Below, piece by piece: positions 17,023-44,600 of a stretch of DNA of 64,000 nucleotides. The position numbers and the translations under genes were made by a program. Location of the stretch: positions 6,076,001 to 6,140,000 of the forward strand of contig NC_047066.1 of assembly GCF_902459465.1 (NCBI RefSeq), written 5' to 3'. Position 1 is the stretch's first letter, and every line of letters starts with the position of its first letter. Origin of the DNA: Asterias rubens (lineage: Eukaryota). Below the pieces are notes generated by a model, which saw only the letters and a program-made list of their open reading frames with translations, was not told the DNA's origin and made no database searches.

Positions 17023-17837
17023 TTCAGCGTTCCACTGTTGGTGTTTTTACAAAACCATGTCATGGTTCATAGCTCCATGGTCATACTATGTTGACAACTT
17101 GACATTCTTTGCAAAAACACCAAAACAAAAAACAAGACGGCTGCGATGCTTCCACCACTCAATAAGCCTATGTTGTGAAATGCTTCATGCATAAAAAAAA
17201 AAACCACAGACAACAAAGACAAACAAAGACGATGACTTTGCAAACCGGCTTTTACTGAATAATACAAATCGCATACATTACAAGCAATAAATCAATGTCT
17301 ACACACAATGGACTCCGCTGTGAGTGCAGATTGTCTTGTCAAAGTTCACAAAGGTGCATAAACTATCTTGTACTGATCGACAGGTAACCCGTAACTACAT
17401 TAACCATTATTACATAATAACTATGATTATCCATTCCAGTTTATCTAGTTTTGTAATTTCTTAAGTAATTATGTTCCTGTTAATTTTCCTTTTAGTTATC
17501 AACTCTCAATATGTATTTAAGGGTGCATAGCAAACAAATTGTGTAAAACAGTTTAATTACCAATAAACATTGTTTTGTGTTATTTTTTGCTGTATGCATT
17601 ATACCTTTCACTGTACTTTTATTTCATCAGTCAACATTGTTATTGTTATAAACTAAAACCAATTAATTTATATTATAAAGGGTCGTCCAGGCTCTATACA
17701 AGCCTAGGCTTTTCCTTTGGTGCCCTTCTCTGATCACCCTTTGTTCTTTTGTCTTGTATGTTTTATGATTATTTATTGTGATATTTGGAAATAAAAAACA
17801 AACAAACAAACAAACATATGATATGTGTAGTTGTTTA

Positions 17838-18741: not shown

Positions 18742-20902
18742 TCAACATTTGAGACCAGTGGCTTCACAACTGACTGTCCATAACTCTTTGGCGATCTCGT
18801 CATCTTGAGCAAATGGCGACGGTTCATACTCCGCGCAGTTATCAAAGTACTTCCCGGAGAGTTCAGCCACCGATTCATCCAGAGCGCAATGGAGCGTAGT
18901 CTGCGCTCCAGCTGTCTCGTCGATAAATACCATCCTGTATACATTGTAAAAGTAAAAAATGTGTAGTGATAAGTTTATGGTTCAAGAAAGAATTGAAGAA
19001 TCCGTTAAATTCTACAAAGAAATACGATGTAGCCAGCAACTTTCTGTTTCATGTAAGAAACTACCTTTAAATTCTTAACAATAACACTTACCACATTAAT
19101 GGAGAAAACACATAGTACAATGCACCCTGTATAGGCGATAAGTTGCCCATGGTAGTTTTCCAAATCGGTGTATAAATTGCCCCTGGGTGGTTGGAGGTGG
19201 AAATCAGCCCACTAGCCTTCTCTCGTCTCGCCAACTCTCGGGCGAAGAGGACATTTGCGAGTTTGCTAATATCGTAGTCCTTAAGGTGTGGATACAGGAA
19301 GCTCGCTACATTCGGGTCTTCTCGGGTCATGTTCGGCTCTGGGGCAAAGCCTTGAGCCATGGAAGATACAGTAACGACCCGCTTGAGGGCGCTTTTCTTC
19401 AGCAAGTCCAGGAGGAGATTTGTGAGAAGAAAGTGACCGAAGTGGTTGGTGCCGAAGACAAAATCAAAATTTTCCTTGGTAACAGCGCCTGCTTTCATGG
19501 CAGCAACACCTGGAACCAGAAAACAAAAAAGCAGATGCATATTATTTAAAAGGGTATTAATTTAACAATACAAAAGAAGGGGATTATGAGCAACTGGAGA
19601 TGTACACCCACTAGTGTGGTCTAGAACAATTTTAAATTAAACAAACTTTGTCGACAGTAATATTTAGAAGTTGCCGACATTGTTTCAAGTACCACTGTGC
19701 CTACCTGCATTATTAATTAGTATATCTAGTCTGTCTTCTGTTTCAATGATCTGTTGGGCGAACTCTCGGACCGACTGCAAGCTGGACAGATCGAGATGAC
19801 GGACCACAACCTCCGAGTTACCCGTACTACTCTTGATGTCCTTCGCTACGTCTTCGGCCTTCTGTAGATTGCGGCAGGCGAGGATGACCCGAGCTCCTCG
19901 CCGAGCCAAGTCCAAAGCTGTCGTCTTACCGATGCCAGAGTTACCTCCTTTTGAAAGAAGCGGGGAAACAGGGAGAGAGAAACAAACAAACAATCAAAAC
20001 ATATTAAAGTAAAATTTTCAAGTCGATCATATTGATCAATTTTGGCTTAAGTCGATCAATAATTAACAAAACATTTAAACAATGTAACTTACCAACGCAA
20101 TGGCACCTCACTCGATACATATGGATGGTATGGAGATTCTGTTCCCCAGACAAGTTTTACGAATGAGTGGCTTGAGCTATGGCTTGACTGCACATGAACG
20201 AGCGTTGAAGTGCTGCACGCTCAGTGGAAGCCGCAGCCACAGCCGGAGCCGCCACGGCCTCATAGCCAAGTCTTCCCAATGGTCTTCCAAAACACAATTT
20301 ACACGTCTGCCCGCTATCTCCATGCTCAGACCAGTCTACCAGTCCTGATCAGTCATATAGTCCAAGTGTCCAGCTTAGTGGATATTTTAAAGATCTTGAA
20401 CAACGTTGGTCCTTTGAAAACATGTTCATTGTGAATTAATATAAAAACAGCATGTGCTAGAGTTGCTCAACTTTGGGTATTTACCGGTCAATGGCGAAAC
20501 ATCGACTTGGTATGTTGGTCCGGAGAGACTGGGCAAGTCAATGAATGTTTTTCATGTTCCGGAAAGTAATTCGGGCTACGATATCGGCGACTACAAACAG
20601 AATCGTGTGGGGCATCGGAAGTAAAGGGTTGGCCATATATACCGCCAACTTGTTCATTGCATGCCCCGATTACATTCTAACACGTAACTCACAGCCCGTG
20701 TTCACTGCGTGTGCCACACGGAGCACTGTGCTATTGCGCTGATTACGTAGGGAGGCCTACCTGTTACGATCACCGTTTTCCCGTCGAGTACCACATCACT
20801 GGTGAAATACCGTCTGCTAGCAATTATCTGCCAATAATAAACCCCGTACAACGCTACCAAAATCGGCAGCACCCACTTGATGGTTGCGGACAGGCAAGCC
20901 AT
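18742..20902 (-). CDS. SDR gene D: RDH11-14-like, 4 exons, 331 aa
   Basis: Exons 20761-20902, 19705-19947, 19092-19509, 18742-18934. Motifs TGGNSGIG, NNAG and YDISK. Confidence 0.93.
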
Positions 20903-22974
20903 CGTAAACACCAGCTATTCGAGAGGCTTTTACTTTTTTTATATAATGTTGAGTTACCAGAAATCCGGCGTGCAGCTTTTAGCACTCGAATAGCAACATG
21001 CAGTGTTCCATAGTGGTATACTCGTGCACAGTCTATATAACGTATTATTACGCAACCTAATGTTTGCATCTCGCGAACAGTCGAGTTTGCCGAGTTATAA
21101 ATAGCGGTGCGGATTCGTTTGCCTGTACAGTCGATAGTTATCAAGGTCGCTGTGACCATTGAGGAACACCATGGCCGGGCAGCTAATATTATTCTCCCCC
21201 AAACGACATTGCAATGATTTGGTAAAAGAGCAGGCCAATTTCATTATGATGTAATTTTGACGGAATGAGTCGGTGTCGCATGCAATTATGTCCTCTATGC
21301 AATACTATCCGGAGGACATAATGGCATATGCAATAATGTTCGCCGGACAGTTTTGCATTATGCAGTTGTGTCCGCCCCGTGCAAAACCGTCATTGAGGTA
21401 AATTAAACGCCCTTGGTCGACAGAACACATTCGCGATTCTCTTTTTACAAGCTTAGTGCATATCATGAATGACATGGGAAATGTTCGGTCGTTGGGTATT
21501 CGCTGCAATCATAAAATACATGAATATTCATGCTGCATCTGACACCGGTTTTGACGGAAAGGGGAAACACGTGTTGCAATGTCGTCTGGGAAAAAAACAA
21601 TTCGCGGCCGGGCCGGCCGGGCACCTCCATGGGAAGAAATCTATAGGAGTTCGAACGACCTATGTGGTCATAGATGCCTTGCTCTTTGCTGGGACTTAGA
21701 ACTATCATCTCCAGGCGTAGACTGCTCGCTGATGACCTCTTTATAAAAGGAACGTTGTTAGAGAGGACAGTAAAACAACGGAACATAAAGTGGAAATGCG
21801 ATTTGGGACTTAAGAATGTTTTATTATAAAGTATAACTTTCCTCTAAATGGTAATGCTACAGGTTCGCTACACATTTCAAGGACGTTTAAATTAAAACAT
21901 CGTTGGGTCATTTATATTTTATAAGCCAATGAGGGTTGCTTTCCTCTCAATTTTGAGAAAAAAACTTTGAGATAGTCCGCTTGGTATGTGTTGTTTCTTG
22001 CACGTTCAAACCATAGATGTTTTTATTCCACCGTGGATTGTAGGGAATATCATAAATGTGCTCGTCGAAATCATTGATGGAAAGTAAACCGTTGATTCGG
22101 TGTTGTTCTCACTGTGTTTCAGCCTAAAGCTCGTGGTTGGCTCGTTTAATTTTTATATGTTGAAACCTTATAATGGATTGGAAAATAATTGGTCTAGTTG
22201 GCAAATTATAGTGTTCAAAAAAACTTGTCAAGCCGTTGCTTTTATGTAAATTTTTCATCAGTTTGTTCAGTGTGCGTTTTGTTCATGCGAAACCTTTAGT
22301 TGAATTTGAATATTATTGTCTTACTGTAGATTGTCACTGATGTTTCTATAAGTCTCAGTAGACTACTTGACATTCCTTGCAGAAACAAGATGGCTGCGAT
22401 AATACAACCACATTTAGGCCAATGGTTATATAGTAAATGCTCCATACACAAAACAAACAGCAAACACGATGACATTGCAAACTGACTTTTACTGAATACA
22501 ATTCGCATGTAATAATTTACATGCAAAAACAATCAATGTCTTCACACAATGATCTCCGTAGATCTGTACAATATGAACTATTCTTGTACTGGTCGACATG
22601 ATATTTGTAGTTGTTAAAGCCGTTAAACTATGACTTTGGGACCGCAGATAATGCATTAAACCATCACATTTCAACCCCAACCACTGATAGCAATAATACA
22701 AACTCCCTCCACTGTTTCCACGAGGAGAATAGTCTCGAATCGGGACGCTGGTTTTTGTATAGTCGCCGGTAGAGGGCGCAACATGAGCTGGCTCGAGGGA
22801 CTTGGCAAGACTACGAATCTGGATCAAAACAAAATGTCGACGTATACACAAGCGTGTTTTTTAATTTGTTCATAAGTACCCAAGACAATTTATCCAATCT
22901 GATTGGTCGAGAGGGGTTCACGTGGCCATATACAAAATACGTAGTGGTGGATGCCAACTTATTACAAAACTTAA

Positions 22975-27430: not shown

Positions 27431-28307
27431 TTAAAGCTATGTTTTAATGCTTTGACCTCATTAGTCCAAATTTATTTTATTATCAAAAGCACTCTGTATG
27501 GGCTGTTTTGGATCTGACAGTTCACAATTACTATCAGCATACACTTGAGAGATATATTTCACCTTTGTACTTAATCACACCATAAGGGTTTCACAATTGT
27601 GTTTATAACACCCTTTACAAACATTCTGCCTTTTCATTGGTTTATTAGAGCGCGTCACATGATATGTCTTGGTTTTACTAGAAACGGCGGCCGTGTGAAA
27701 GTGCATCGTTACGTCTGGGTACTGTCGAACGGCGTGCACTACCCAGACGTCTTTCTAACCACGTCGAACCCAATCAGTTGTGCTCTGTGTATCTGAAACG
27801 CGCGAACGAGCGTGACGTGTACAAGGATGATAAATAGTCTGTTGGGGGTGTTATAAAACAAATAGTGACTGCTTCCGAGTGCTATGGTTAAAACAACGAC
27901 TCCCTCGGTGATCCCCGGACCGTTCCATTTTCCCGAAGCGCATGCTCCGGGGAAATCCTCGGGAGTCGTATTTTTAAGTCAATATTTGTTTAATAGAAAG
28001 TGATAGTTCAACTTGAAAATCACTGTCTTTCCAAAAATAACATGATGTGAAACACAGCTGAAACAGTTTAAATTAAATTTCTGAAGTAATTTCTTTAGTA
28101 AAAACAAAATGTTAAACTGTACAATACATTGTACTCGATAATGTAAGTAAAGCACTTTATAACATGCTTATAAATCTTGCAAAATAGTTATTAATGTGAC
28201 CAACCGTCGTTTAACAAAGTACAAAGATTAGGGGAAATATATAGTTTAAGTCAGAGAATAGACTCTAAAGATTAAATTCGTGACGACAATGTACTCGCCT
28301 GCGGCTG

Positions 28308-29587
28308 GTGCATTCTATTAACGAATCTACACTTTCTCGTCCATTCTACTTAACCCTTCGGCTCGTGCATTCTATTCGCGAATCTATACTTTCTCGTCCA
28401 TTCTCCTAACCAATCGGCTCGTTTGTTCTATTCACGAATCTACACTTTCTCGTCCATTCTCATTAACCCTTCGGCTCGTGCATTTCACGAATCTACACTT
28501 TCTAGTCCATTCTACTTAACCATTCGGCTTGTGCATTTCACGAATCTACACTTTCTCGTCCATTCTACTTAACCATTCGGCTCGTTTATTCTATTCACGA
28601 ATCTACACTTTCTCGTCCATTCTCCTAACCAATCGGCTCGTTTATTCTATTCACGAATCTACACTTTCTCGTCCATTCTACTTAACCATTCGGCTTGTGC
28701 ATTCTATTCGCGAATCTATACTTTCTCGTCCATTCTCCTAACCAATCGGCTCGTTTGTTCTATTCACGAATCTACACTTTCTCGTCCATTCTCATTAACC
28801 CTTCGGCTCGTGCATTTCACGAATCTACACTTTCTAGTCCATTCTACTTAACCATTCGGCTTGTGCATTTCACGAATCTACACTTTCTCGTCCATTCTAC
28901 TTAACCATTCGGCTCGTTTATTCTATTCACGAATCTACACTTTCTCGTCCATTCTCCTAACCAATCGGCTCGTTTATTCTATTCACGAATCTACACTTTC
29001 TCGTCCATTCTCCTAACCAATCGGCTCGTTTATTCTATTCACGAATCTACACTTTCTCGTCCATTCTACTTAACCATTCGGCTCGTTTATTCTATCCACG
29101 AATCTACACTTTCTCGTCCATTCTCCTAACCAATCGGCTCGTTTATTCTATTCACGAATCTACACTTTCTCGTCCATTCTTCGGCTTGTGCATTTCACGA
29201 ATCTACACTTTCTCGTCCATTCTTCGGCTTGTGCATTTCACGAATCTACACTTTCTCGTCCATTCTCATTAACCCTTCGGCTCGTGCATTTCACGAATCT
29301 ACACTTTCTCGTCCATTCTACTTAACCCTTCGGCTTGTGCATTTCACGAATCTACACTTTCTCGTCCATTCTACTTAACCCTTCGGCTTGTGCATTTCAC
29401 GAATCTACACTTTCTCGTCCATTCTACTTAACCCTTCGGCTTGCGCATTTCACGAATCTACACTTTCTCGTCCATTCTACTTAACCATTCGGCTTGTGCA
29501 TTTCACGAATCTACACTTTCTCGTCCATTCTACTTAACCATTCGGCTTGTGCATTTCACGAATCTACACTTTCTCGTCCATTCTCCT
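28308..29587. repeat. Minisatellite, ~43-58-bp units (core tcacgaatctacactttctcgtccattct), roughly 23 copies
   Basis: Direct reading; there are no unique spacers. A 332-bp higher-order duplication is marked by cgcgaatctatac at 28377 and 28709. Confidence 0.95.
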
Positions 29588-30721
29588 TTACATAATTATT
29601 GAATGAACAATAACACCCTAAGAGCTTCATATCGGAATATTTCCATTGCAACTAATTCCTGCTCAGCTCATTGTCACATGGAGACAAAAATAAACAATGG
29701 TGCCAGACTTCATGAGGCAGAAGTGAAACTCTTTCTTCGTCCTGTTTTCATACGAGTAAACGATTTTATGAAGAGAGGTTGATTTCACAAAGTTAATTTT
29801 AGGACTATAGTCCTTGGACTCTTAAGGAGTTATCAAACAACTTAAGGATGGTCCTATGTTACTCGTCCTAACTCGAGATAAAAGACGAGTATTAACTCTT
29901 TGCGAAATCCACCACAGGACTCTCACAATGTCATGGTGCAGTTATAAAGTCAAGATAAATTTCAAACAGTTGATTACAAAAACTGTATACGTTGACAAGT
30001 TGAGTTTTTGCATTTTTGTGCATTACAATTTATATACATAACTTATACAGATCGTTGATACATATGAAAACCAAACCACTGTTACACCTATACATTCATA
30101 TAATGACACAGCCTAAAAGATCTACCCGGTTACAATGGGAAAACAATGGTCAAAGACAAAGACTAAAGCACCCCCTAGATCAGTCAATATTGTTGATAAA
30201 CAAACCGCCCTGGTTGGCATGGCCGGCCGAATGAATCGAATCGCTTTAACAGATACTGTTACAGATCCAAACACGTCTGCAAACTTCAAAAAAAAAATTA
30301 AAAGCTGTACATCTATGATTTGTTGCTTTGTTTCCAACAAATTCATCACTAATGCTTATTGTGTAACATTTTTACAAACTGTAATGGCTACCTGTTTTTG
30401 CGTTGCATTTATGGCTTTTCATAGTTTAAACCTCGGTTGGCAAAACTAGGGCTGTGACGTTGCAGTTAGAAAAGTTTCCTTCTTATCGACCTTCAGAATA
30501 TGTGCCATTCTTGCAACGGGTTCCTCAAACCATGGAGGAAGAACTCAAACAAGGTGCCTGCCACTGCGTGACGTCATTGGCGTCGCATGAAAGGCCCCTA
30601 AGCAGCTAAGCACAATCAAAAGTAAGCTAATACCAGAATAAGGTTACCAACCAAACTACTACGTCAAATGAACCATGGACCATCTTTGACAGGTACACCG
30701 CTCATAGGAATTCTGAACAAA

Positions 30722-32005: not shown

Positions 32006-35000
32006 TCAGCAATTCAATTTGGTGGCCTCACAGCTCGCATCCCAGAGTGCTTTAGCAAGCTCAGGGTCCTGCGCTCTAAGCGACGGCTCTACCACCTCTG
32101 AGTTATCGAAGTAGCTACCGGAAAGGTTCACGACCGACTCGTCTAAGGCACAGTGCAGGGTTGTCTGGGCTGCTGCTTTGTCGTCCAAGAAGATCAACCT
32201 GGGGAGGGGGAACGTGAAAGAGGGGTGGAAGTTATTGCATCGATGAAGTAATAATATGATGTAGGACCTACGGGAGGCATGTGATTTTTTTTGCTCACTT
32301 GGTGTATCCAAACTTTAGGCCTAGGCATAAAATAACAAACATGTCAAAATTTGGGCTCAATGGTCATCGAAGTTGCAAGAGAATAATGAAAGAAAGAAAA
32401 AACACCCTTGTTGCACATTACTCTATGTGCTTGCAGATGCATAATAAAAGGCTTCAGCTGAAGTCTTCTACATTTACTTCGGATGGAGCCAGTTCTCACA
32501 ATGTGTTAAATAATGAACAGCTCTCCGTTGCTCATGCCAAGTACGTTTTCATGCCAAACATGTTTTTGAGAAATTACCAATGGGGTGGATTTCACAAAGG
32601 TAGTCCTAACTTAGTACTAGTCCTAGGCAATGCTAAGAGATAGGACTGGTCCTAAGTTAGGACCAGTAACTCATCCTAACTTAGGGCTGGTCCTATCTCT
32701 TAGCATTGCCAAGGACTAGTCCTAAGTTAGGACTACCTTTGTGAAATCCACCGCGGTGCCTTTATAAAACGACAAGAAACAAACGAGTGCCTACCTCTGT
32801 GGGAGATACAGCAGCCCGGGCGAGTAAACAACTCCCGGGTGCAGCGAGACCGCAACGACCCCGGTGGACTCCAGCCGCCTCGCCAGCTCGCTACTGAAGA
32901 GAATGTTAGCCAGTTTGCTCTTAGAATACCCCTTAAGGTACGGGTATAGTATGGTATCTTTACCACCATCAGGGTCACTTCGAGTCATGTTGATCCCATG
33001 AGCAACTCTGTGGATGTATGAGGAAACGGTGACCACCCGACTGGGGGCGCTCTTCTTCAGTAGATCTAGGAGGAGGTTGGTGAGAAGGAAGTGACCGAAG
33101 TGGTTGGTGCCGAAAGCGAGATCGAAGTTGTCTACAGTTGCCGAGCCTTCCGTTGGTGGTACGAGAGCTATATTATAGGTTGATACGAAATGGAGATGAT
33201 ATCATTACTGATCTATCAATCCCAAGTTTGTTTTGAGTAAAGCTTGATTGCACATGACGTCATTGATGGATTGCACATGACGTCATTGACCAGCATCTTT
33301 GATGTAAAACAATGGAAAGTGCACGCGTGTTACGCACTGAGCACAACTCTCAGCCAATGAGAGTCTTACACGTGTGATTGTTTCATCGAAGATGGCGGCC
33401 AACATTGTGACAGATATATCTACCTTCATTGTTTATAAGTATGTCTAGCCTTTTCTCCTGCTCGTTTATCTCCTGGGCGAACTCTCTGACCGACTGCAAG
33501 CTGGACAGATCGAGATGACGGACCACAACCTCCGAGTTACCCGCACTACTCGTGATGTCCTTCGCTACGTCTTCGGCCTTCTGTAGATTGCGACAGGCGA
33601 GGATGACTCGAGCTCCTCGCTGGGCCAAGTCCAAAGTTGTCTCCCGACCGATACCCGTGTCTCCACCTTTTGAACGAAAAATTCAAATATCACTTGGTAA
33701 AAAAAGGTTGCCGAAGACTGGTCGAAAATTCGTGTTTTTTAATTAGTGTGTAATATATTTATTTCCAGGCAGGAGCACACAAACAATACATTCAACAAAC
33801 TAAACATCTGAGAACAAGCCTGTTGATAACCACTGCGAAAACAATTAACATCTTAAGGCGATTCAGACAATAACAAAAGTACAAACGTCATACAAAATTT
33901 GAAATAACTTTTTTTTATTATAACTCTTCATCATTTATTAAAGACACTGGACACTATTGGTAATTGTCAAAGACTAGTCTTCACAGTTGGTGTATCTGAA
34001 CATATTATGCATAAAATAACAAACCTGTGAAAATCTGAGCTCAATCGGTCGTCGAAGTTGCGGGATAGTAATGAAAGGAAAAAAAACCTTGTCACACGAA
34101 GTTGTGTGCTTTCTGATGCTTGATTTTGAGACCTCAAATTCTAAACTTGAGGTCTCGAATAGTTTCCACTGCCTTTAAATTACAATTCTCGGGAAATACT
34201 TCGTACATCAACCGAAAGCACATACATAAATTGTTGTCTCACATGTCTAACAGAATAAAACATCAAATTATTTTGTCATCTTCGTTGAAAGAGTTACTCA
34301 ATACATAAATAGAGCAGATTAAACAAAGCCATCACACGTTACGTTTGAAGCTTGTGCATGGTGTATAATATGGAAAAAAAAATAAGAACTGTTACTATAG
34401 GATAACAACCATGGCCCAGTTTCATAGAGCTGCTAAGCACAAAAATGTGCTTAACAAACAGGAAATTTCTTCCTTGATAAAAACAGGGTTACCAACCAAA
34501 TTTCTATGTGTTGCATTTTGCTTGTTACTGGTATTCAACTGTTGTTTTATCCTGAAAATCACATGGAAATTTGTTTGGTAATCCTGGTTCATCAAGGAAG
34601 AAATTTCATGCTTAGAAAATTGTTGTGCTTAGCAGCTCTATGAAATTGGGCCCAGGTGTAAATCTCTTTTGGGAGGAGTGTTTGCTCTGTGACGCTGTTC
34701 CAAACGTGAATACCACATAGGCTCTTTTCAGATCCATACAACCCTACCAGAAGAGAGTGGCATAATTACAGCATATTCAAAGACTGGCTTGTTTGTACAA
34801 CCACAGAGCAAGCACTCAGAGACAAACCTGGATTTCTTCACGAACGAAAAATTGTCTGAACTTCGAACCTAGAAACCACTTTCCAAACGGCTCACCGTGC
34901 CACATGCAGGAATGATACTTCACGGAGGCAACGAAGGCGAGTGCCTCCTTGCCCGTTGCTCATTGTCTTGGTGCTCTTGAAATGCTCAAAAGTAGGAATA

Positions 35001-35506
35001 TTACAATTTCCTCATAGGGTGCCCCATTTACCAAGGAGAAAAATGCCTTGGTGCCCTAATCTTCCCCTTGCCCAGTTCAAAAACGAAAAAAATGTAACGG
35101 CGCCAATATACCAGAGGGCGCCAACGACAGCCACACAATGACTGGTCCGTTGGCGCCAAAAATAAGGCGAAAAAACTACACGTCCTTGGACCTCATACTT
35201 TTGTCAAAAGGGGTGAAATGACTTCTCGGTCAATTCACCGTGCCGCTGGAATTCGTATAATCCATACACAGTGTGACGAAGCAGCCCTAGTAGAAAAAAT
35301 ACTATGCCATGGCCAGAGAAAAGAGCACAAAACAACAAACGTCTTACGACGTCACGGTCATCTTAGAATTTACCTGTGATGAGTACCGTCTTCCCATGAA
35401 GGTCCTCGTCGCTCGTGTACCAGCGAGAATTCCATACCAGGCTCCAACACCGAAAACCATACAGTATCAAGAGGCATACGGTTATATTTACACCAACACT
35501 TTCCAT
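32006..35506 (-). CDS. SDR gene F: divergent RDH11-14-like paralog (313 aa with proximal first exon, 316 aa with distal one)
   Basis: Proximal exon 1 35374-35506 (MESVGVNITVCLLILYGFRCWSLVWNSRWYTSDEDLHGKTVLITG), then exons 33424-33666, 32795-33167, 32006-32198. The frame is open if exon 3 splices at AG|GTAG (32795/32794). Motifs TGGDTGIG, NNEA and YSKSK. The exon 3-4 junction is less certain than in the other paralogs. Confidence 0.8.
32584..32752. mobile_element. 169-bp fold-back MITE (TIR GGTGGATTTCACAAAG) in intron 3 of gene F
   Basis: 79-bp arms with about 5 mismatches and an 11-nt loop. Diverged relatives at about 29775-29910, 30966-31108 and 47582-47648. Confidence 0.85.
33942..34174. 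mobile_element. MITE family 1, internally deleted
   Basis: TTAA-agacactggacactattgg ... tttccactgcct-TTAA. Confidence 0.8.
34412..34654. mobile_element. MITE family 3, full length
   Basis: tggcccagtttcatagagctgctaagcac ... gtgcttagcagctctatgaaattgggccca inverted termini. Confidence 0.8.
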
Positions 35507-36443
35507 AATTTTAGTTTAAATGTTGGTGTAGTAGAATCATCGAGCTATGATTAACAGTAGACTAACATAAACAAACTCCCACCGTCCCCCAGTTCTCCTG
35601 TTGCTGTATCATCAGTCCGTAGAACAAGATTAGCCCAAGCATCAGTTGTTCGTCGATTGATTTCTCAACGTACATACCCCTATCACATCCCCTATACCCC
35701 ACCAGTACACGTCATTCAATAACATCGTCGATTGTGCAACCTTCTTGAATTGATGCAGTGATGATAACCGTTGCTCTGCTGTGACGTAATTGTGTTTTTT
35801 GCTATGCTAATTAGACTGCTTGTTTATTCTGTCGTGGATATCCGGCCACCACTTCAAACCATAGACTGAGCTATGCGTTCAAACAGTGTCTTGTTCCTTT
35901 GAAGAGCAATGACAGTTGACCACCACCCTGTTACGGTTACACACCTATTTCCGACACCCCTATATTCTGACATCCCTATGTTCCACTTGCGAATCCTAAC
36001 CCTAAATCCTAACCTTATAACCATCGTGTAAGAGGGCTTTTTCGAAACATATAGGGGTGTCTACCTCCATGCTGATGTACAGAGCAGTTGCCCTCCTTGG
36101 ACCATGCTTGAACCATTGAACTAGGCCCTAAGGAAGAAACATACCCCCATGCTTAGATCCTTCATCCAAAACCATAACCTATTACATTTTAGGATTTTAC
36201 AAACAGATAAAGGACGTTGTGAAAACACACTTTGTTTTAATTCCTCAATAAAATCATAAAATCAAACCCATCAGTTCAGGGAAAACCCCCAATGACGTAG
36301 CAACAAGCCGGACTTCTCGATCTAAACCACTCTTTGAGGACTTCTCGATCTGACCACCTCATGGTCTGACCCTCCAAATAGGCTCCATGATTATCTGGAT
36401 TTTAGGATTTTACAAACAGATAAAGGCACCAACGTTCTCTTAA

Positions 36444-36824
36444 AGGCAGTGGACACTATTGGTAATTGTCAAAGACTAGCCTTCACAGTTGGTGTATCTC
36501 AACATATGCATAAAATAACAAACCGGTGAAAATTTGAGCTCAATCGGTCATCAAAGTTGCGAGATAATAATGAAAGAAGAAAACACCCTTGTCACACGAA
36601 GTTGTGTGCGTTTAGATGGTTGATTTCGAGACCTCAAGTTCTAAACTTGAGGTCTCGAAATCGAATACGTGGAAAATTACTTCTTTCTCCAAAACTGTGG
36701 CACTTCGCAGAGGGAGCTGTTTCTTACAATGTTTTATACCACCAACCTCTCCCCATTACTTGTCACCAAGAAAGGTTTTATGCTAATAATTATTTTGAGT
36801 AATTACCAATAGTGTCCACTGCCA
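36444..36824. mobile_element. MITE family 1, full length, between the two first exons of gene F
   Basis: TTAA-aggcagtggacactattggtaatt ... aattaccaatagtgtccactgcc. Confidence 0.88.
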
Positions 36825-38108
36825 TAATGCAAATGGCACGTCATCTTATCCAGTGTTTATGTATTGCAATTTGAAATACACTATCAATTATTATCAGAGG
36901 ACAATGTTATTGCTTATCATTTTGCGTTTTAGTTTTATGTAAAGAATAGAAAAAGGCGTTGGGCTAAGCTCCTTTTCAAAAGTATAAAAAAAATTCTACG
37001 GAGCGAGTTATAAAAAGACCCACGAATTGCTGCAATGACCTAGTGCTTGCTGAATTGCTGTACAAACAGGGAGGGTATACACAAACACGTGTCCTCTTTA
37101 GTCAACCGTTAAAAAATAAACTTTCAGTAAAAAGGCAGCCAATATAGATCAATCGAGTTAGTAAACAAAGCCCCCCCCCCGGTCCAGGGTTCAACAGACT
37201 TTTACAGGCCTCAAAGAAAATGTTTACAATGATGAATGGCCTTGTGTGGGCTTGCCACTACCGGTAGTGGGTAATTATTTATACGGTGCCCCAGTGCCAT
37301 TACACTGCGGATGGAATGATCTGGAACTTCCCCTGTTGAATAATATTCATGTCAGTAAATGTTCGTTTGAAATGAAGGACTCAATGTTTCAGTTTCGGGT
37401 CGTGCCCCTAATGTGGTGTAAGATTAGTGTCTGATGGCCCATATAATATACAGGTATCCCTCCATGCATGGTCAAACCATAGAGAAAGGACATTCTATGG
37501 TAAACCCATTGAGGTGTAATTTCAGATATCCCTCCTCGTGGCTTTGCTCAGCAAAGGCATTGTCAGGCAATTTGCTAGTTTGTAATACCATTTTAATATA
37601 ATAATCATGGGCACAGTAAAGGAGTGAGAACCAAATGTGGCATAATTGGCATAGGACATACGGTATTTTAAAATGAACAGACACACAGAACAGTCGCTTG
37701 GTAAATAGTTATCATCATTCGTTCGACCATCAATCAGACACCATAAAATGACTGTAAAATACTTTTAAAATATGATAATTGCAGCCATAAAAAGGTACAA
37801 ATAATAAGCAAAAACGGGTATTACCAGGGTGCAAACAAGTGCAGCTTAGCAAATGTCGATTTTCGAGGTATCATGCCGGTAATACCTCACTACAGTTATC
37901 ACGTTGTGCATTGGTTCTATAATGGTTACACCATAGGTTAATCATGGAGCTAGAACATTAATATAGCTCCATTGGTCTGTACACCTTTCACTTCGGTAAG
38001 GACAACCTTACTCTATGACTACGCACACACCGTTTACGAAAATAATGGGTCAATCCTCCAAGTCCAAACCATTTAATTGTGCAGCAATAAAACGTTTCAT
38101 GTAATTAC

Positions 38109-38250
38109 CTGTCACAATAATAGTCTTGCCTTGCAGGTCTACACTGCTGGTATAGTAGCGACGATCCCCCGTCAAACTCAGCGTGTATATACAGAAGATG
38201 CTAAACACCAACATGATGGCGTTTGCCATTATCGGTATACTAGCGTCCAT
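38109..38250 (-). CDS. Second (distal) SDR first coding exon upstream of gene F
   Basis: ATG-initiated 142-bp exon MDASIPIMANAIMLVFSIFCIYTLSLTGDRRYYTSSVDLQGKTIIVTG ending G|GTAAT (phase 1). Same length and motif as exon 1 of A-D and G, and frame-compatible with F exon 2. Confidence 0.8.
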
Positions 38251-39774
38251 GTTTGTGTATAGGACCTAGTACTCTAACGTGTAGTAAGGCTAAGTTTTTA
38301 TTGACCATAGAGCAAGATTTGACCCAAACACACACGGCAACCGGAACTCGTCTTCCCTATAGTATATCACGTTTGTACTTCTGGTACGTTTCTATGAATT
38401 TGCATTTTTAACCATCCGTGCATAGCGGAGCCGTAGCTATTCATCATGGAGCTGTTCCCAGTGCTGCATTGTCTTGTTTACAACCAGTTGTGTTTGAGTT
38501 CATTTCCGACTCCCAATAAATTCATGCATTGACATCATACAGCCACCATCTTAGAGGTACACACGAAAACGCACAGATTTGCACAGAGGGCGCCCACACG
38601 TTTCGCAACAATAAAGAATCTCCTTTTGCTAAGCGAGGGCGCCCTGTACTGAAGACATCATGCGCATAAGTTTGTTCAATAAAACGATTCCAATATGACG
38701 TAAAATTAACATAATTTGTAGTTGTTTCTTTGTAGACACAGAGTGGCTTGATCATGATACTCCACACACATAGGCCTACATCCTGGTCATTGATTGGTCG
38801 AGCACGCGTCGCGCGTTATATCCCTTGTATTATTGCCGCGACGCTCCAAAATTTAATATAGGTGTCCTATATGGATATTCATGACGATTCGGATGCTTCA
38901 CATTGCGTAGTTTCCTATCGCTCCCAACCCGATCAGACAAAGTAATTTCGTGTCACGGTGATGGACAAGTTTGGTGTTTCTACATGAACAGGAGTCGTCC
39001 AGGTCATGCATCAAAATACAACATCACTGCGCTTCAACTTTTGAGGAGATTTGTATAAATTGAGGCTATAAAATTCCCTGGTACTATTTGGCTTCGGAAT
39101 GGAAGGAATGCCTCATGGAAACTATAGCACATTATAGGGGGTGTGTTTTAGGGTAACTTGCGAGCATTCCAAACGGCTGACCTGCAAACATTGAAAAGAA
39201 ATCTGAAGTATAATTTGTCTAAAAGTATATATTGGTTTTCAAGAGGCTGAGAGACTTTAAAACATTTTTGAGTATTTAGCATTTAGCGCTGGTTAGTTTC
39301 ATGGTGGTTCATTTAGTGTGGGGGGCACCCACAAACTATACTTCTGATAGCGCCCTCTTTTGAAATATCCTCCTTCAGTCCTTGTTAACCGGTGTCAGAT
39401 GCAATTGTGTCCGCCTTGCAATACTGTCCGTTCCGGGCACTTGTCTACATGCAATCGTGTCCGGGGCTATGCAAAAACCGTCCAGTGTTTTAAGTGCATG
39501 TCATTCATGACATGCACTTAGCTTATGAAAAAAATGGCGAACGTTTTCCGTCGACCAAGGGCGTTTAATTTACTGCATGGAAGGTTTTGCACGGGGCGGA
39601 CACAACTGCATATTCAACTGTGTCCAGGCGGACACAGTTGCATTATGCAGCAGCGTCCAGGCGGAAACGATTGCATATGGCGGCTGCTGTAACCAATAAC
39701 TGTTTTGGTCACTGATTAGTGCTTAACCAATGGCCAAGTCAACCGAGACAGTTATTGGTAACGATCGTCCTTAA

Positions 39775-41698: not shown

Positions 41699-44600
41699 AT
41701 GGTATCCTTGGGTGTTGTGGTGACATTGTTATTGCCGAGTTTTGCGGTGTTTTACGGGACGTACCATTGGCATGTTATATCAACCAGGCGGTACTGTACA
41801 AGTTATGCCAAGCTCAATGGAAACACAGTCATTGTAACGGGTACGTATACAAACAAATTATTGGTTTTTTTTTTTCAATGGTATATTATTGTTTAGATGA
41901 TCGGGCACCGGCTGTCAGCCACCACGGAACTCTCTTCGTTCGTCATATTGTGTTTATGAGTTTTGCTCAAAAAACCAACTTGATATGACATGCAATGACT
42001 ACTATAACTAGTAAATAGATTTTTTTTTTATGTTCTTATTTCGGGAATTTCACCGCATGCGCAAGCGAATAGTGAAAGGAAAAAATACACATGTTGCACA
42101 ATCTGTATGCTCGGGGCTTCAGGCCTGAAGGTATATGTTAACATTTGGGTGAGAAACTACCTTTTTCTAAAAACAAAGCAAAAATAAAACACGTACGTTT
42201 CTTCAGAGGGAGTCGTTTCTCACAATGTTTTATACTATCAAAAGCTCTCTATTACTCGCAAGGAAGTTTTCATACTAACAATTATTTTGAGTAATTACCC
42301 ATTAGTGTCCAGTGACTTTAAAGGCAGTGGACACTATTGGTAATTACTCAAAATAATGATTATCATAAAACCTTTCTTGATTACGAGTAATGGGGAGAGG
42401 TTGATAGTATAAAACATTGTGATAAACAGCTCCCTCTGAAGTGACGAAGTAATTTTCCACGAATTTGATTTCGGGACCTCAGATTAAGAATTTGAGGTAT
42501 CGAAATCAAGCATCTAAAAAGCACACAACTTCGTGTGAGAAGGGTTTTTTTTTTCCTTCATTATTTTCTCACAACCTCGACTACCAGTTGAGCTCAAATG
42601 TTCACAGGTTCGTAATTATGCATAATGTTGAGATACACCAAGTGAGAAGACTGGTCTTTGACAATTACCAATAGTGTCCAGTGTCAATGTGTCTTTAAAG
42701 GCAGTGGACACTATTGGTAATCACTCAAAACAATTATCAGCATAAAACCTTTCTTGGTGACGAGTAATGGGGAGAGGTTGATAGTATAAAACATTGTGAG
42801 AAATGGCTCCCTCTGAAGTGCCATACTTTTCGAGAAAGAAGTAATTTTCTACGAATTTGATTTCGAGACCTCAGATGTAGACCTTGAGGTCTTAACGCAC
42901 ACAACTTCGTATGACAAGGGTGTTTTTTCCCTTCATTATTATTATCTCGCAAGTTTGATGACCGATTGAGCACAAATTTTCACAGGTTTGTTATTTTATG
43001 CATATGTTGAGATACAGCAAGTGAGAAGACTGGTCGTTGACAATAATTATAGCAATAGTGTCCAGTGTCTTTAAGTACAGAATTAATCTCAGACTAATCT
43101 GAGCGGTTAAACAAAAAATGTCGTCTCCGATCGCGCTGAGATTGTACCAGCAGCTTCAGAAAACCCATCCTTTGTACATATTATTTAGTCTCAGACATTT
43201 GAATGAAACGTTTGACAATGTTCGTCTCCGACCATACTTATAGATTTTACCGCCAACTTCAAAATAAAACACCCAAGTTCCTTATACATGTAGTACAAAA
43301 GTAATCTCAGAGCAATAGCCCATTTAAAAAAAACTCTTCGATCACGCTGAGATTTTGCGCCAGTTTGGCCGTTTTCTTTGTCATTTTGACACATAATGGG
43401 TCATACATGGGTGAGGCCGGACCGTCGGAACCCGGAACCCGGAGTCCGGGTCAGTTATGACACCAAAGGGATCAGTTCTGACCAATTAGTGTTGAGCCAC
43501 AGTCAAAGAAAGGCAATAAATTCTGCGGGCATAAGAGAACTTGGGGAGATATTTTAGGCAATCTGATGCCATAAAACGAATAGAAGGTTTATTTTGCAAC
43601 TTACGAGGCAGAGGAGTAAATTGCGAGTAGCATGCAGCCCCTCCCCGTTTGTCTGCAACAACTGTGGTACAGACAACCATGCAAGAATCGGACTTCTATA
43701 CGCCACAGCCGCAGCTGCAATAGAGAGGACAACCCTCCCCCCCCCCCCCCCCCCCACCCCGGCGCAGTACATCGTCAGTATTGACGGACGGATGGCTACT
43801 ATTTTTAATATAAAAACGGTTGGATTAAATACATTTGAAAAAGGGAAAAGAATTGCTGAAAAACTACGATGCAAAAATTTAGCTGCACACATTTATTTTA
43901 AACCATTGAGAGAAAAAAACTAGTATAAAAGTCTAAAAGCACAATGTGCATGAAATATAATTGAAATACATAGAAAATGGCGAAGAAGGGTGAAGGCTTA
44001 ATGCATCTAATGCTCCCTTCTATTTATTCATTCCAGGGGGTAACTCTGGTGTCGGTCGGGAGACAGCATTGGACTTGGCCCAGCGAGGAGCTCGGGTCAT
44101 CCTCGCCTGTCGCAATCTACAGAAGGCCGAAGACGTAGCGAAGGACATCAAGAGTCGTACGGGTAACTCGGAGGTTGTGGTCCGTCATCTCGATCTGTCC
44201 AGCTTGCAGTCGGTCAGAGAGTTCGCCCAACAGATCATTGAAACTGAAGACAGACTAGATATACTAATTAATAATGCAGGTGAGCACAGTGGTATGGTTG
44301 GGTGGCAAAAAGGTTGTAGACATTTTTCTTTAAATCAATGTACCCATCGGGCTGCTCACCGTTGATATCCCCAGTATTTGTCTTGTAACAAAAACCCGTT
44401 TAGGCCAGTACCTCATTTTATACTTTTTGTCTTCTCTTACAGGTGTTGCTGCCATGAAAACAGGCGCTGTTACCAAGGACAATTTTGAATTTGTCTTCGG
44501 CACCAACCACTTCGGTCACTTTCTCCTCACAAATCTCCTCCTGGACTTAGTGAAGAAAAGTGCCCTCAAGCGGGTCGTTACTGTATCGTCATCTTTGCAC

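What the first reader, a model, noticed from the sequence alone, without database searches (positions are those of the whole stretch)
33666..38250. Nine first coding exons for eight gene bodies: gene F has two interchangeable anchor exons
Seen: two different ATG-initiated exons lie upstream of F exon 2, at 35374-35506 (MESVGVNITVCLLILYGFRCWSLVWNSRWYTSDEDLHGKTVLITG) and 38109-38250 (MDASIPIMANAIMLVFSIFCIYTLSLTGDRRYYTSSVDLQGKTIIVTG). Both are stop-free, end in a phase-1 G|GTAA donor and keep the RxYTSxxxLxGKTxxxTG motif. They are strongly diverged from each other, so the duplication is old and both look maintained. I found no exon 2-4 remnant between them, and the proximal exon is invisible in the ORF track. 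Inference: a variable-first-exon design (alternative promoters, different membrane anchors on one catalytic body), loosely like UGT1A-type loci. The alternative is that one exon is the orphan of a deleted paralog.
Basis: partly seen in the sequence, partly recalled or inferred. Interest (0 to 1): 0.72.

Follow-up and report, generated by a model that had tools for sequence, protein, structure and literature searches.

The report
Two alternative anchor exons, one starfish dehydrogenase
One retinol-dehydrogenase-like gene in a starfish (Asterias rubens) tandem array really has two alternative ATG-bearing first exons, each giving the same enzyme body a different N-terminal membrane anchor; this is a correct but ordinary case of alternative first exons, already modelled as isoforms X1/X2 in the sister species.

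Summary
The window is Asterias rubens (G000:C5:6076001-6140000). It holds eight RDH11/12-like short-chain dehydrogenase genes and nine first coding exons.

Gene F (minus strand) has two first exons: distal 38250-38109 and proximal 35506-35374. Both start with ATG, are stop-free, and end in a phase-1 G|GTAA donor.

- **Distal form.** Distal exon plus exons 2-4 translates exactly to the A. rubens RefSeq protein XP_033628130.1 (316 aa).
- **Proximal form.** In Asterias amurensis the same two exons, with conserved donors, splice to the same exons 2-4. They give exactly RefSeq isoforms X1 (316 aa) and X2 (313 aa). A. rubens RefSeq lacks the proximal form.
- **RNA evidence.** In four RNA-like runs, contigs leave the genome exactly at the distal donor. 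In one run (X10) a contig of equal depth does the same at the proximal donor. The break pattern there fits two paths converging on one exon 2.
- **No lost gene body.** No exon 2-4 remnant lies between the two exons in either species.

The UGT1A comparison is only loose: there are two exons, and each encodes only the anchor and first beta-strand. Separate promoters, different targeting and the exon's origin remain untested.

The scan's earlier notes held nothing on this beyond the same finding.

The parts
38109..38250 (-). Distal first coding exon (1d): ATG at 38250, 47 codons plus the first base of a split Gly codon, donor GT at 38108-38107. It encodes a hydrophobic N-terminal segment, a linker, and the first beta-strand with the T-G of the TGxxxGxG motif.
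   Evidence: Sequence. 1d plus exons 2-4 translates exactly to P0271 = XP_033628130.1. Contigs of X1, X14, X10 and X5 all match down to 38107 and then carry 24-87 other letters. Kyte-Doolittle 19-residue maximum is 2.16.
38251..38556 (-). Transcribed leader upstream of the 1d ATG. The true start site is unknown.
   Evidence: Contigs reach 38424-38556 in four runs. The outermost ~36 bases (38524-38560) are a dispersed repeat, which probably breaks the contigs. The leader holds 13 upstream ATGs.
35374..35506 (-). Proximal first coding exon (1p): ATG at 35506, 44 codons plus the first base of the split Gly codon, donor GT at 35373-35372. It keeps the same motif at its end but has a different, less hydrophobic N-terminal segment containing Arg and Trp.
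   Evidence: Sequence. A 762-letter contig of run X10 (depth 281) matches 36108-35372 and then carries 24 other letters. The A. amurensis orthologue (L001 17561-17693) spliced to exons 2-4 gives exactly P0272 = XP_071790658.1. KD maximum is 1.71.
35507..36108 (-). Sequence transcribed contiguously with exon 1p in run X10. It is a leader of at least 600 bases. Its start was not resolved.
   Evidence: table 8, record 11. The introns on either side have zero or near-zero depth in X10 (table 2). It holds 14 upstream ATGs. It is 96% identical to A. amurensis.
33424..33666 (-). Shared exon 2 (phase-1 acceptor). It encodes the rest of the glycine-rich cofactor motif through to I-N-N-E.
   Evidence: Contigs lie on 33474-33607.
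32795..33167 (-). Shared exon 3. It holds the catalytic Ser and the Y-x-x-x-K motif.
   Evidence: In all four runs, contigs of 987-1600 letters match exactly 32793-33167, that is they are spliced at both ends. Also.
32006..32198 (-). Shared exon 4 coding part, including the stop codon.
36440..36823 (.). Very high-copy SINE-like repeat in the interval between the two first exons. It is not part of the gene's coding design, but it limits what contigs can show.
   Evidence: Word depth reaches millions and there are hundreds of joints. Many copies lie in L001, but none at the collinear site.
33938..34170 (.). Truncated second copy of the same repeat, in the same orientation, in the intron between 1p and exon 2.

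Best explanation
Gene F of an Asterias rubens tandem array of RDH11/12-like short-chain dehydrogenases is transcribed from two alternative first exons that are old duplicates of each other.

Each exon carries its own ATG. Each encodes an N-terminal hydrophobic segment, a short linker, and the first Rossmann beta-strand up to T-G. Each ends in a phase-1 donor and splices to the same exon 2 at 33666. The result is two proteins of 316 and 313 residues that are identical from residue 48/45 onwards and differ only in the N-terminal 44-47 residues.

The distal exon is the broadly used one. The proximal exon is used in a subset of samples, where it can reach the same level.

Shown: both exons exist, are intact and conserved in two species, are transcribed, and are spliced at their donors; the two-isoform model reproduces RefSeq proteins exactly.

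Inferred:
- Each exon has its own start site.
- Use is sample-specific by regulation.
- The different N-termini change membrane anchoring or compartment. In vertebrate RDH11 (ER) and RDH13 (mitochondrial inner membrane) the first ~20 residues hold the enzyme on its membrane.
For: Gene map: eight bodies, nine first exons.

Model check: the 1d model equals XP_033628130.1 exactly. The A. amurensis 1d and 1p models equal XP_071790657.1 (X1) and XP_071790658.1 (X2) exactly, with donors GTAATT and GTAAAT conserved.

Contigs:
- In X1, X14, X10 and X5 (a second species), contigs end their match at 38107 and run on.
- In X10 a contig of depth 281 (1d contig: 290) ends its match at 35372 and runs on for 24 letters.
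- In X10 both first-exon contigs run exactly 24 letters (26 counting the shared GT) past the donor. That is the length expected for k=31 graph paths that share ACAG and then merge on one downstream exon.
- In the three runs without spliced 1p, the 1d contig runs 87 letters past the donor, ending at about 33578. In X1 the next exon-2 contig starts at 33607, a 30-letter (k-1) overlap.
- In X10 the introns on either side of the 1p exon have depth 0.

Word index: six runs from four studies hold the 1p stretch. X14, X15 and X16 are not listed as holders of 1d. X9, of the same study as X16, is listed for 1d only.

Conservation between species: 1p is 98.5% and 1d is 97.2% identical, both without indels, against about 95-96.5% with indels in most flanking non-coding DNA. 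The body has pN/pS 0.07.

Pfam adh_short starts at residue 42 (1d form) or 39 (1p form), so the variable exon supplies the anchor plus the first strand.

Family knowledge: the RDH11 N-terminal segment anchors it in the ER, and the RDH13 N-terminal segment holds it on the mitochondrial inner membrane (PMC5133129).
Against: - The acceptor side of the joints was not displayed, because repeats filled the joint table. The 1p-to-33666 junction in A. rubens is therefore inferred, not read.
- All runs are contigs with guessed library type, so start sites, strand and levels cannot be read.
- Spliced 1p was seen in one of four laid runs. X14 shows only an unspliced low-depth contig across the 1p donor.
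- The contiguous 1p leader has 14 upstream ATGs, which argues against efficient translation. The 1d leader has 13, so this does not discriminate between the two.
- Between-species differences in the first exons are too few (1 synonymous and 1 non-synonymous in 1p; 2 and 2 in 1d) to prove selection.
- RefSeq X2 is an automatic model.
- 1p is less hydrophobic and may not be a membrane anchor at all.
Confidence: 0.8

Rival explanations
1. The proximal exon is a relic, the orphaned first exon of a paralogue whose body was deleted. It still has a working donor and some promoter activity, so it is spliced to F exon 2 opportunistically. The 313-aa product has no separate function and its use is neutral.
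For: - The array evolves by tandem duplication, and TE turnover around the exon is high. SINE copies sit on both sides in A. rubens only, and A. amurensis has 4.7-kb and 1-kb extra pieces.
- 1p is spliced in only one of four laid runs.
- The leader is long and rich in upstream ATGs.
- Species differences are too few to show constraint.
- 1p is no closer to 1d than to other paralogues' first exons at the DNA level. Its best match is exon 1 of gene E, 75% over 44 bases.
Against: - The frame, ATG and donor are intact in both species, with no indel, while flanks accumulate indels.
- In X10 its contig depth equals that of 1d.
- It keeps the Y-T-S...D-L-x-G-K-T signature shared only with 1d, which suggests the two are sisters within the F lineage.
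- No body remnant is left in either species. If a deletion happened it is old, and the exon has survived since.
Confidence: 0.17
2. The 1p-bearing exon is not a first exon but an internal cassette of transcripts that start at 1d or further upstream. In that case the 1p ATG would be internal and the product different or non-coding.
For: - The X10 contig runs at least 600 bases upstream of the 1p ATG, and its start is unresolved.
- A good polypyrimidine-AG sits at about 36128.
Against: - In X10 the 1d contig continues 26 letters past its donor instead of stopping there. A k-mer graph would stop at the donor if the donor fed two abundant acceptors.
- The 1p contig ends at 36108 with no foreign letters.
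- X10 depth is about zero over 37058-38027.
- RefSeq X2 starts translation at the 1p ATG.
- An in-frame stop lies 12 bases upstream of that ATG.
Confidence: 0.03

Closest known systems
Asterias amurensis orthologous gene, RefSeq isoforms X1 (XP_071790657.1) and X2 (XP_071790658.1)
   Same: It has the same two first exons, the same donors and the same shared exons 2-4. The proteins differ from the window's by 2 (1d) and 1 (1p) residues in the first exon.
   Different: It is an automatic model in another species. There the two exons are 7.4 kb apart instead of 2.6 kb. A. rubens RefSeq lists only the distal form.
UGT1A and clustered protocadherin variable-first-exon loci (from general knowledge)
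   Same: Homologous first exons lie in tandem, each with its own ATG. Each is spliced in a mutually exclusive way to shared downstream exons.
   Different: There are only two exons here. The variable exon encodes about 45 residues (anchor plus first beta-strand), not the substrate- or ligand-specific domain. A promoter for each exon is not shown.
Alternative first exons arisen by tandem exon or gene duplication that give N-terminal isoforms with different targeting signals (a common class in animal genes; general knowledge)
   Same: The architecture and the presumed logic are the same: one catalytic body and two N-termini.
   Different: Nothing essential differs. Here the targeting difference is only predicted.
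Vertebrate RDH11 / RDH12 / RDH13 / RDH14
   Same: It is an adh_short enzyme with an N-terminal hydrophobic segment followed by the glycine-rich cofactor motif. In RDH11 the N-terminal segment anchors the enzyme in the ER, and in RDH13 the N-terminal segment holds it on the mitochondrial inner membrane (PMC5133129).
   Different: In vertebrates the different N-termini sit on separate genes. Gene F is a fast-evolving starfish-lineage paralogue (branch 0.63). It has N-N-E-A in place of N-N-A-G, and the stretch between H-P-G and the A-Q-T-T-L-H-C-A-L motif is about 15 residues shorter. Its substrate is unknown.
Acanthaster planci RDH12-like gene, isoforms X1/X3 versus X2 (XP_022096271.1, XP_022096273.1, XP_022096272.1)
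   Same: Modelled isoforms have different N-terminal sequences in front of a body that is identical from G-A-N-S-G-I-G onwards, the position of the phase-1 exon 1/2 boundary in the Asterias genes.
   Different: The alternative N-terminus there is unrelated in sequence and lacks the G-K-T-x-x-x-T-G strand. In gene F both exons keep it.

Membership tests
Short-chain dehydrogenase/reductase (Pfam adh_short, PF00106) | Profile match above the curated cut-off | tested here: met
   P0271 scores 102.7 bits and P0272 scores 102.4 bits, against a cut-off of 26.6. The domain starts at residue 42 (1d form) or 39 (1p form).
Classical SDR, RDH11/12/13/14-like | Glycine-rich cofactor motif T-G-x-x-x-G-x-G | tested here: met
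   The motif is T-G-G-D-T-G-I-G. T-G comes from either first exon and the rest from exon 2.
Classical SDR, RDH11/12/13/14-like | N-N-A-G motif at the end of strand 4 | tested here: not met
   F has N-N-E-A in both Asterias species. The other seven genes of the window have N-N-A-G. F is therefore filed as a divergent adh_short protein that RefSeq names 'RDH12-like', not as a proven retinol dehydrogenase.
Classical SDR, RDH11/12/13/14-like | Catalytic Ser and Y-x-x-x-K | tested here: met
   V-S-S and Y-S-K-S-K are present.
Classical SDR, RDH11/12/13/14-like | N-terminal hydrophobic membrane segment | tested here: inconclusive
   The KD 19-residue maximum is 2.16 for 1d, which is clear. It is 1.71 for 1p, which has an internal Arg. 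No dedicated predictor or experiment was available.
Classical SDR, RDH11/12/13/14-like | Retinoid oxidoreductase activity | not testable with these tools
   This needs an enzyme assay.
Variable-first-exon locus (UGT1A / protocadherin type) | Two or more homologous ATG-bearing first exons in tandem upstream of shared exons, with the same donor phase | tested here: met
Variable-first-exon locus (UGT1A / protocadherin type) | Each first exon splices directly, and exclusively of the other, to the first shared exon | tested here: met
   The RefSeq X1 and X2 proteins are reproduced exactly in A. amurensis. The contig ends at both donors and the 26-letter convergence pattern in X10 agree. The A. rubens 1p junction itself was not displayed.
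Variable-first-exon locus (UGT1A / protocadherin type) | Each first exon has its own promoter | not testable with these tools
   Only contigs were available. No read starts could be seen.
Variable-first-exon locus (UGT1A / protocadherin type) | The variable exon encodes the specificity-determining domain, in a multi-exon array | tested here: not met
   There are only two exons. Each encodes 44-47 residues that end at the first beta-strand.

The most novel reading that the evidence does not exclude
The two first exons form a regulated compartment switch. By choice of start site, one fast-evolving, motif-altered dehydrogenase (N-N-E-A, shortened loop) is sent to two different membranes or made in a weakly anchored form. 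The locus was born when a tandem paralogue collapsed onto its neighbour, which would be a minimal, recently evolved variable-first-exon locus caught early.
Probability: 0.2. Interest if true: 0.4.

Novelty: new member of a known kind. Interest (0 to 1): 0.25.

Why it matters
- **Annotation.** It fills a small gap. A. rubens RefSeq lists only the distal-exon protein, while the proximal-exon isoform is expressed and is modelled in A. amurensis.
- **Biology.** It offers a compact natural test of how much the first ~45 residues decide where an RDH11/13-type enzyme sits, since the body is identical in both forms.
- **Evolution.** It shows how a tandem gene array can yield alternative first exons.
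- **Scope.** None of this changes current understanding. Alternative first exons with different N-termini are common in animal genes.

Tried and rejected
1. The joint table of read laying was filled by SINE-like repeat joints, with 642 joints not shown. The acceptor of the exon-1 joints could not be read.
2. The search for homologous proteins on residues 1-45 of the proximal isoform gave no candidate. The index holds only cluster representatives, and the representative carries the distal N-terminus, so this blank says nothing about more distant species.
3. The look-up of encoding contigs with the 313-aa isoform returned nothing, because only the longest product of a gene is on record. The 316-aa isoform gave the A. 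amurensis locus.
4. I searched for a decayed gene body between the exons with tblastn, word-7 blastn and relaxed tblastn, using all eight paralogues and two control intervals. Only chance-level hits came back.
5. I searched for DNA similarity between the surroundings of the two exons, to tell exon duplication from paralogue collapse. None was found, so the origin stays open.
6. Literature searches for alternative first exons in retinol dehydrogenases, and for starfish RDH arrays, found nothing relevant.
7. No clear orthologue of gene F exists among Patiria or Acanthaster proteins. F sits on a long branch inside a starfish-specific clade, so older conservation of the two exons could not be tested.
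8. Counts of upstream ATGs were considered as a sign that 1p mRNA is untranslated. This was rejected as non-discriminating, with 13 in the 1d leader and 14 in the 1p leader.
Full report
**What is there**

The window is animal DNA. Its gene C N-terminus and its gene F protein match Asterias rubens RefSeq proteins exactly. The genome tool places the window at G000:C5:6076001-6140000 of a 417.6-Mb assembly.

A motif scan and tblastn with the gene F exon peptides map eight four-exon genes of the RDH11/12-like short-chain dehydrogenase family. Genes A-F and H are on the minus strand and G is on the plus strand, head to head with F.

There are nine exon-1-like pieces. Two of them lie upstream of F exon 2 (33666-33424):
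- Distal exon 1d, 38250-38109.
- Proximal exon 1p, 35506-35374.

Both begin with ATG in a good context (A at -3, G at +4) and are stop-free. Both end ACAG|GTAA with one base of a split Gly codon. Both keep the family's end-of-exon motif.

**Is anything hidden between them?**

No.
- tblastn at E<=10 finds no exon 2-4 piece between 35.5 and 38.1 kb.
- Word-7 blastn and relaxed tblastn with the exons of all eight paralogues give only chance-level hits there, no better than in two control intervals.
- The homologous interval in A. amurensis, which is 7.4 kb long, has none at E<=1e-3.
- The interval in A. rubens holds a very high-copy SINE-like repeat (36440-36823). A truncated copy in the same orientation lies in the intron below 1p (33938-34170).
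- The DNA around the two exons shares no similarity. Whether 1p and 1d arose by exon duplication or by loss of a paralogue's body cannot be told.

**Protein database evidence**

A profile-free search with exon 3 led to starfish RDH-like proteins.

The 90%-identity cluster of the gene F protein has three members:
- XP_033628130.1 (A. rubens, 316 aa).
- XP_071790657.1 (A. amurensis isoform X1, 316 aa).
- XP_071790658.1 (A. amurensis isoform X2, 313 aa).

X2 begins with the 1p peptide and differs from the window's only at residue 2 (Glu to Ala). X1 begins with the 1d peptide and has two differences.

I fetched the A. amurensis locus (L001) and spliced it in a script. 1d plus exons 2-4 of the window gives XP_033628130.1 exactly. 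In L001 the orthologous exons (10001-10142 or 17561-17693, then 20391-20633, 20894-21266 and 21882-22074) give X1 and X2 exactly, with both donors conserved.

So the two-first-exon design is already modelled in the sister species. The A. rubens annotation simply lacks the second isoform.

**RNA evidence in A. rubens**

The word index found runs with transcriptome-sized contig sets. X1 and X2 hold the 1d stretch but none of the 1p stretch. Six runs from four studies hold the 1p stretch, and three of them (X14, X15, X16) are not listed as holders of 1d.

I laid four runs on 32790-38600.

- *Runs behave as RNA.* Exon 3 is covered by contigs that match exactly 32793-33167 inside longer records. 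Introns have no or very low depth.
- *Distal exon.* In all four runs (X5 is a second species with A. amurensis-like differences), a contig matches from 38424-38556 down to 38107 and then carries other letters. Position 38107 is the last base that intron and exon 2 share after the donor.
- *Proximal exon.* In X10 a 762-letter contig of depth 281 (1d contig: 290) matches 36108-35372 and then carries 24 other letters. That is the same behaviour at the 1p donor.
- *Convergence.* In X10 both contigs run exactly 24 letters (26 with the shared GT) beyond the donor. Two k=31 graph paths that end in the same ACAG and merge on one exon would break there.
- *Runs without spliced 1p.* The 1d contig runs 87 letters instead, ending at about 33578. 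In X1 the next exon-2 contig begins at 33607, a 30-letter overlap. This geometry ties both first exons to exon 2, although the joint table itself was swamped by repeat joints and did not list them.
- *X14.* It shows only an unspliced, depth-5 contig across the 1p donor, alongside other low-depth intronic contigs. This fits pre-mRNA of the 1d transcript.
- *X1 and X5.* They have zero depth at 1p.

**Usage and start sites**

The distal exon is therefore general. The proximal one is sample-restricted but can equal it.

Within study P8, X9 is listed only for 1d, X16 only for 1p, and X10 and X11 for both. This suggests regulated choice, but it rests on presence or absence in an index.

Start sites cannot be read from contigs. 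The 1p contig reaches 36108 without foreign letters. The 1d contig in X10 does not stop at its donor. Both points argue against 1p being an internal cassette of 1d transcripts. Both leaders are rich in upstream ATGs (13 and 14), so their true 5' ends may lie closer to the ATGs.

**Conservation**

Between the two Asterias species, most flanking non-coding DNA is about 95-96.5% identical, with indels. Exon 1p is 98.5% and exon 1d is 97.2% identical, both gap-free.

The shared body is under clear purifying selection (pN/pS 0.07; 14 synonymous and 3 non-synonymous differences). The first exons have too few differences to judge (1d: 2 and 2; 1p: 1 and 1). The residue-2 difference of 1p is also a variant in runs X10 and X14 (35502).

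More distant species could not be reached. Gene F sits on a long branch (0.63) inside a starfish-specific clade, without a one-to-one orthologue in Patiria or Acanthaster. The N-terminal region search was blank for technical reasons.

**How it most likely works**

Choice of transcription start gives one of two first exons. Each supplies the N-terminal 44-47 residues, and Pfam adh_short begins at residue 42 (1d form) or 39 (1p form). So the variable part is the hydrophobic segment, a linker and the first Rossmann strand, and everything else is shared.

The 1d segment is a typical signal-anchor (KD maximum 2.16). The 1p segment is less hydrophobic (1.71) and contains Arg and Trp.

In vertebrate relatives the first ~20 residues hold the enzyme on its membrane. 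The RDH11 N-terminal segment anchors it in the ER facing the cytosol. The RDH13 N-terminal segment holds it on the outer face of the mitochondrial inner membrane (PMC5133129).

A change of anchoring or compartment is thus the most likely consequence. It is an inference only.

**Comparison with the known**

This is an ordinary class: alternative first exons, here homologous ones, giving N-terminal isoforms.

It resembles UGT1A or protocadherin loci in layout only. There are two exons, no specificity domain in the variable part, and no shown promoter for each exon.

A related Acanthaster gene is modelled with an alternative N-terminus in front of a body identical from G-A-N-S-G-I-G onwards, the position of the Asterias exon 1/2 boundary, but that N-terminus is unrelated and lacks the first strand.

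Literature searches found no description of such a design in retinol dehydrogenases or of the starfish array.

Gene F itself is an atypical family member. It has N-N-E-A where all seven neighbours have N-N-A-G, and the stretch between H-P-G and the A-Q-T-T-L-H-C-A-L motif is about 15 residues shorter. It is nevertheless expressed, correctly spliced and constrained.

**Verdict**

The novelty is low: a new member of a known kind, already modelled in the sister species. What remains open is the origin of the second exon, its start site, and whether the two N-termini do different things.

Noticed in passing
window 33424-33436 / 33160-33167 (exon 2/3 junction of gene F): Gene F has N-N-E-A where the other seven genes of the array have the conserved SDR motif N-N-A-G. 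The stretch between H-P-G and the A-Q-T-T-L-H-C-A-L motif is about 15 residues shorter in F (316 aa against 330-334). F sits on a long branch (0.63) yet shows pN/pS 0.07 between two Asterias species, and it is highly expressed in run X10.
   Followed up: partly
window 36440-36823 and 33938-34170: Two copies of a very high-copy SINE-like element, in the same orientation, lie on either side of exon 1p. Their word depth in RNA-like runs reaches millions. Neither copy is present at the collinear site in A. amurensis, so they are lineage-specific insertions.
   Followed up: partly
L001 10996-15739 and 18188-19188 (A. amurensis): A. amurensis has about 4.7 kb extra between the two first exons and about 1 kb extra in the intron below 1p, relative to A. 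rubens. The 4.7-kb piece has no open frame of 120 aa or more and no dehydrogenase remnant.
   Followed up: partly
window 35929-35984: A ~50-base motif inside the 1p leader matches many short tandem arrays all over the genome (170 matches, 85-95% identity). It looks like a minisatellite-like dispersed unit.
   Followed up: no
window 28200-29850: This is a tandem array with a period of about 53 bases downstream of gene F. It aligns as a ladder against L001 24775-25000. It coincides with a strong negative GC skew (-0.34) in 28001-30000.
   Followed up: no
window 41705-41839 (gene G exon 1, + strand): Gene G lies head to head with F, and about 3.1 kb separates the two leaders. Its first exon has G-N-T instead of the G-K-T found in the other first exons, and the same is true in the A. 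amurensis orthologue.
   Followed up: no
A. rubens RefSeq annotation of gene F (XP_033628130.1): Only the distal-exon protein is annotated in A. rubens. The proximal-exon isoform, which is expressed in run X10 and modelled as X2 in A. amurensis, is missing.
   Followed up: yes
Acanthaster planci proteins P0168, P0274, P0275: A related gene is modelled with an alternative, unrelated N-terminus in front of a body identical from G-A-N-S-G-I-G onwards. It replaces the anchor and the G-K-T-x-x-x-T-G strand, and such a product would lack the first Rossmann strand.
   Followed up: no
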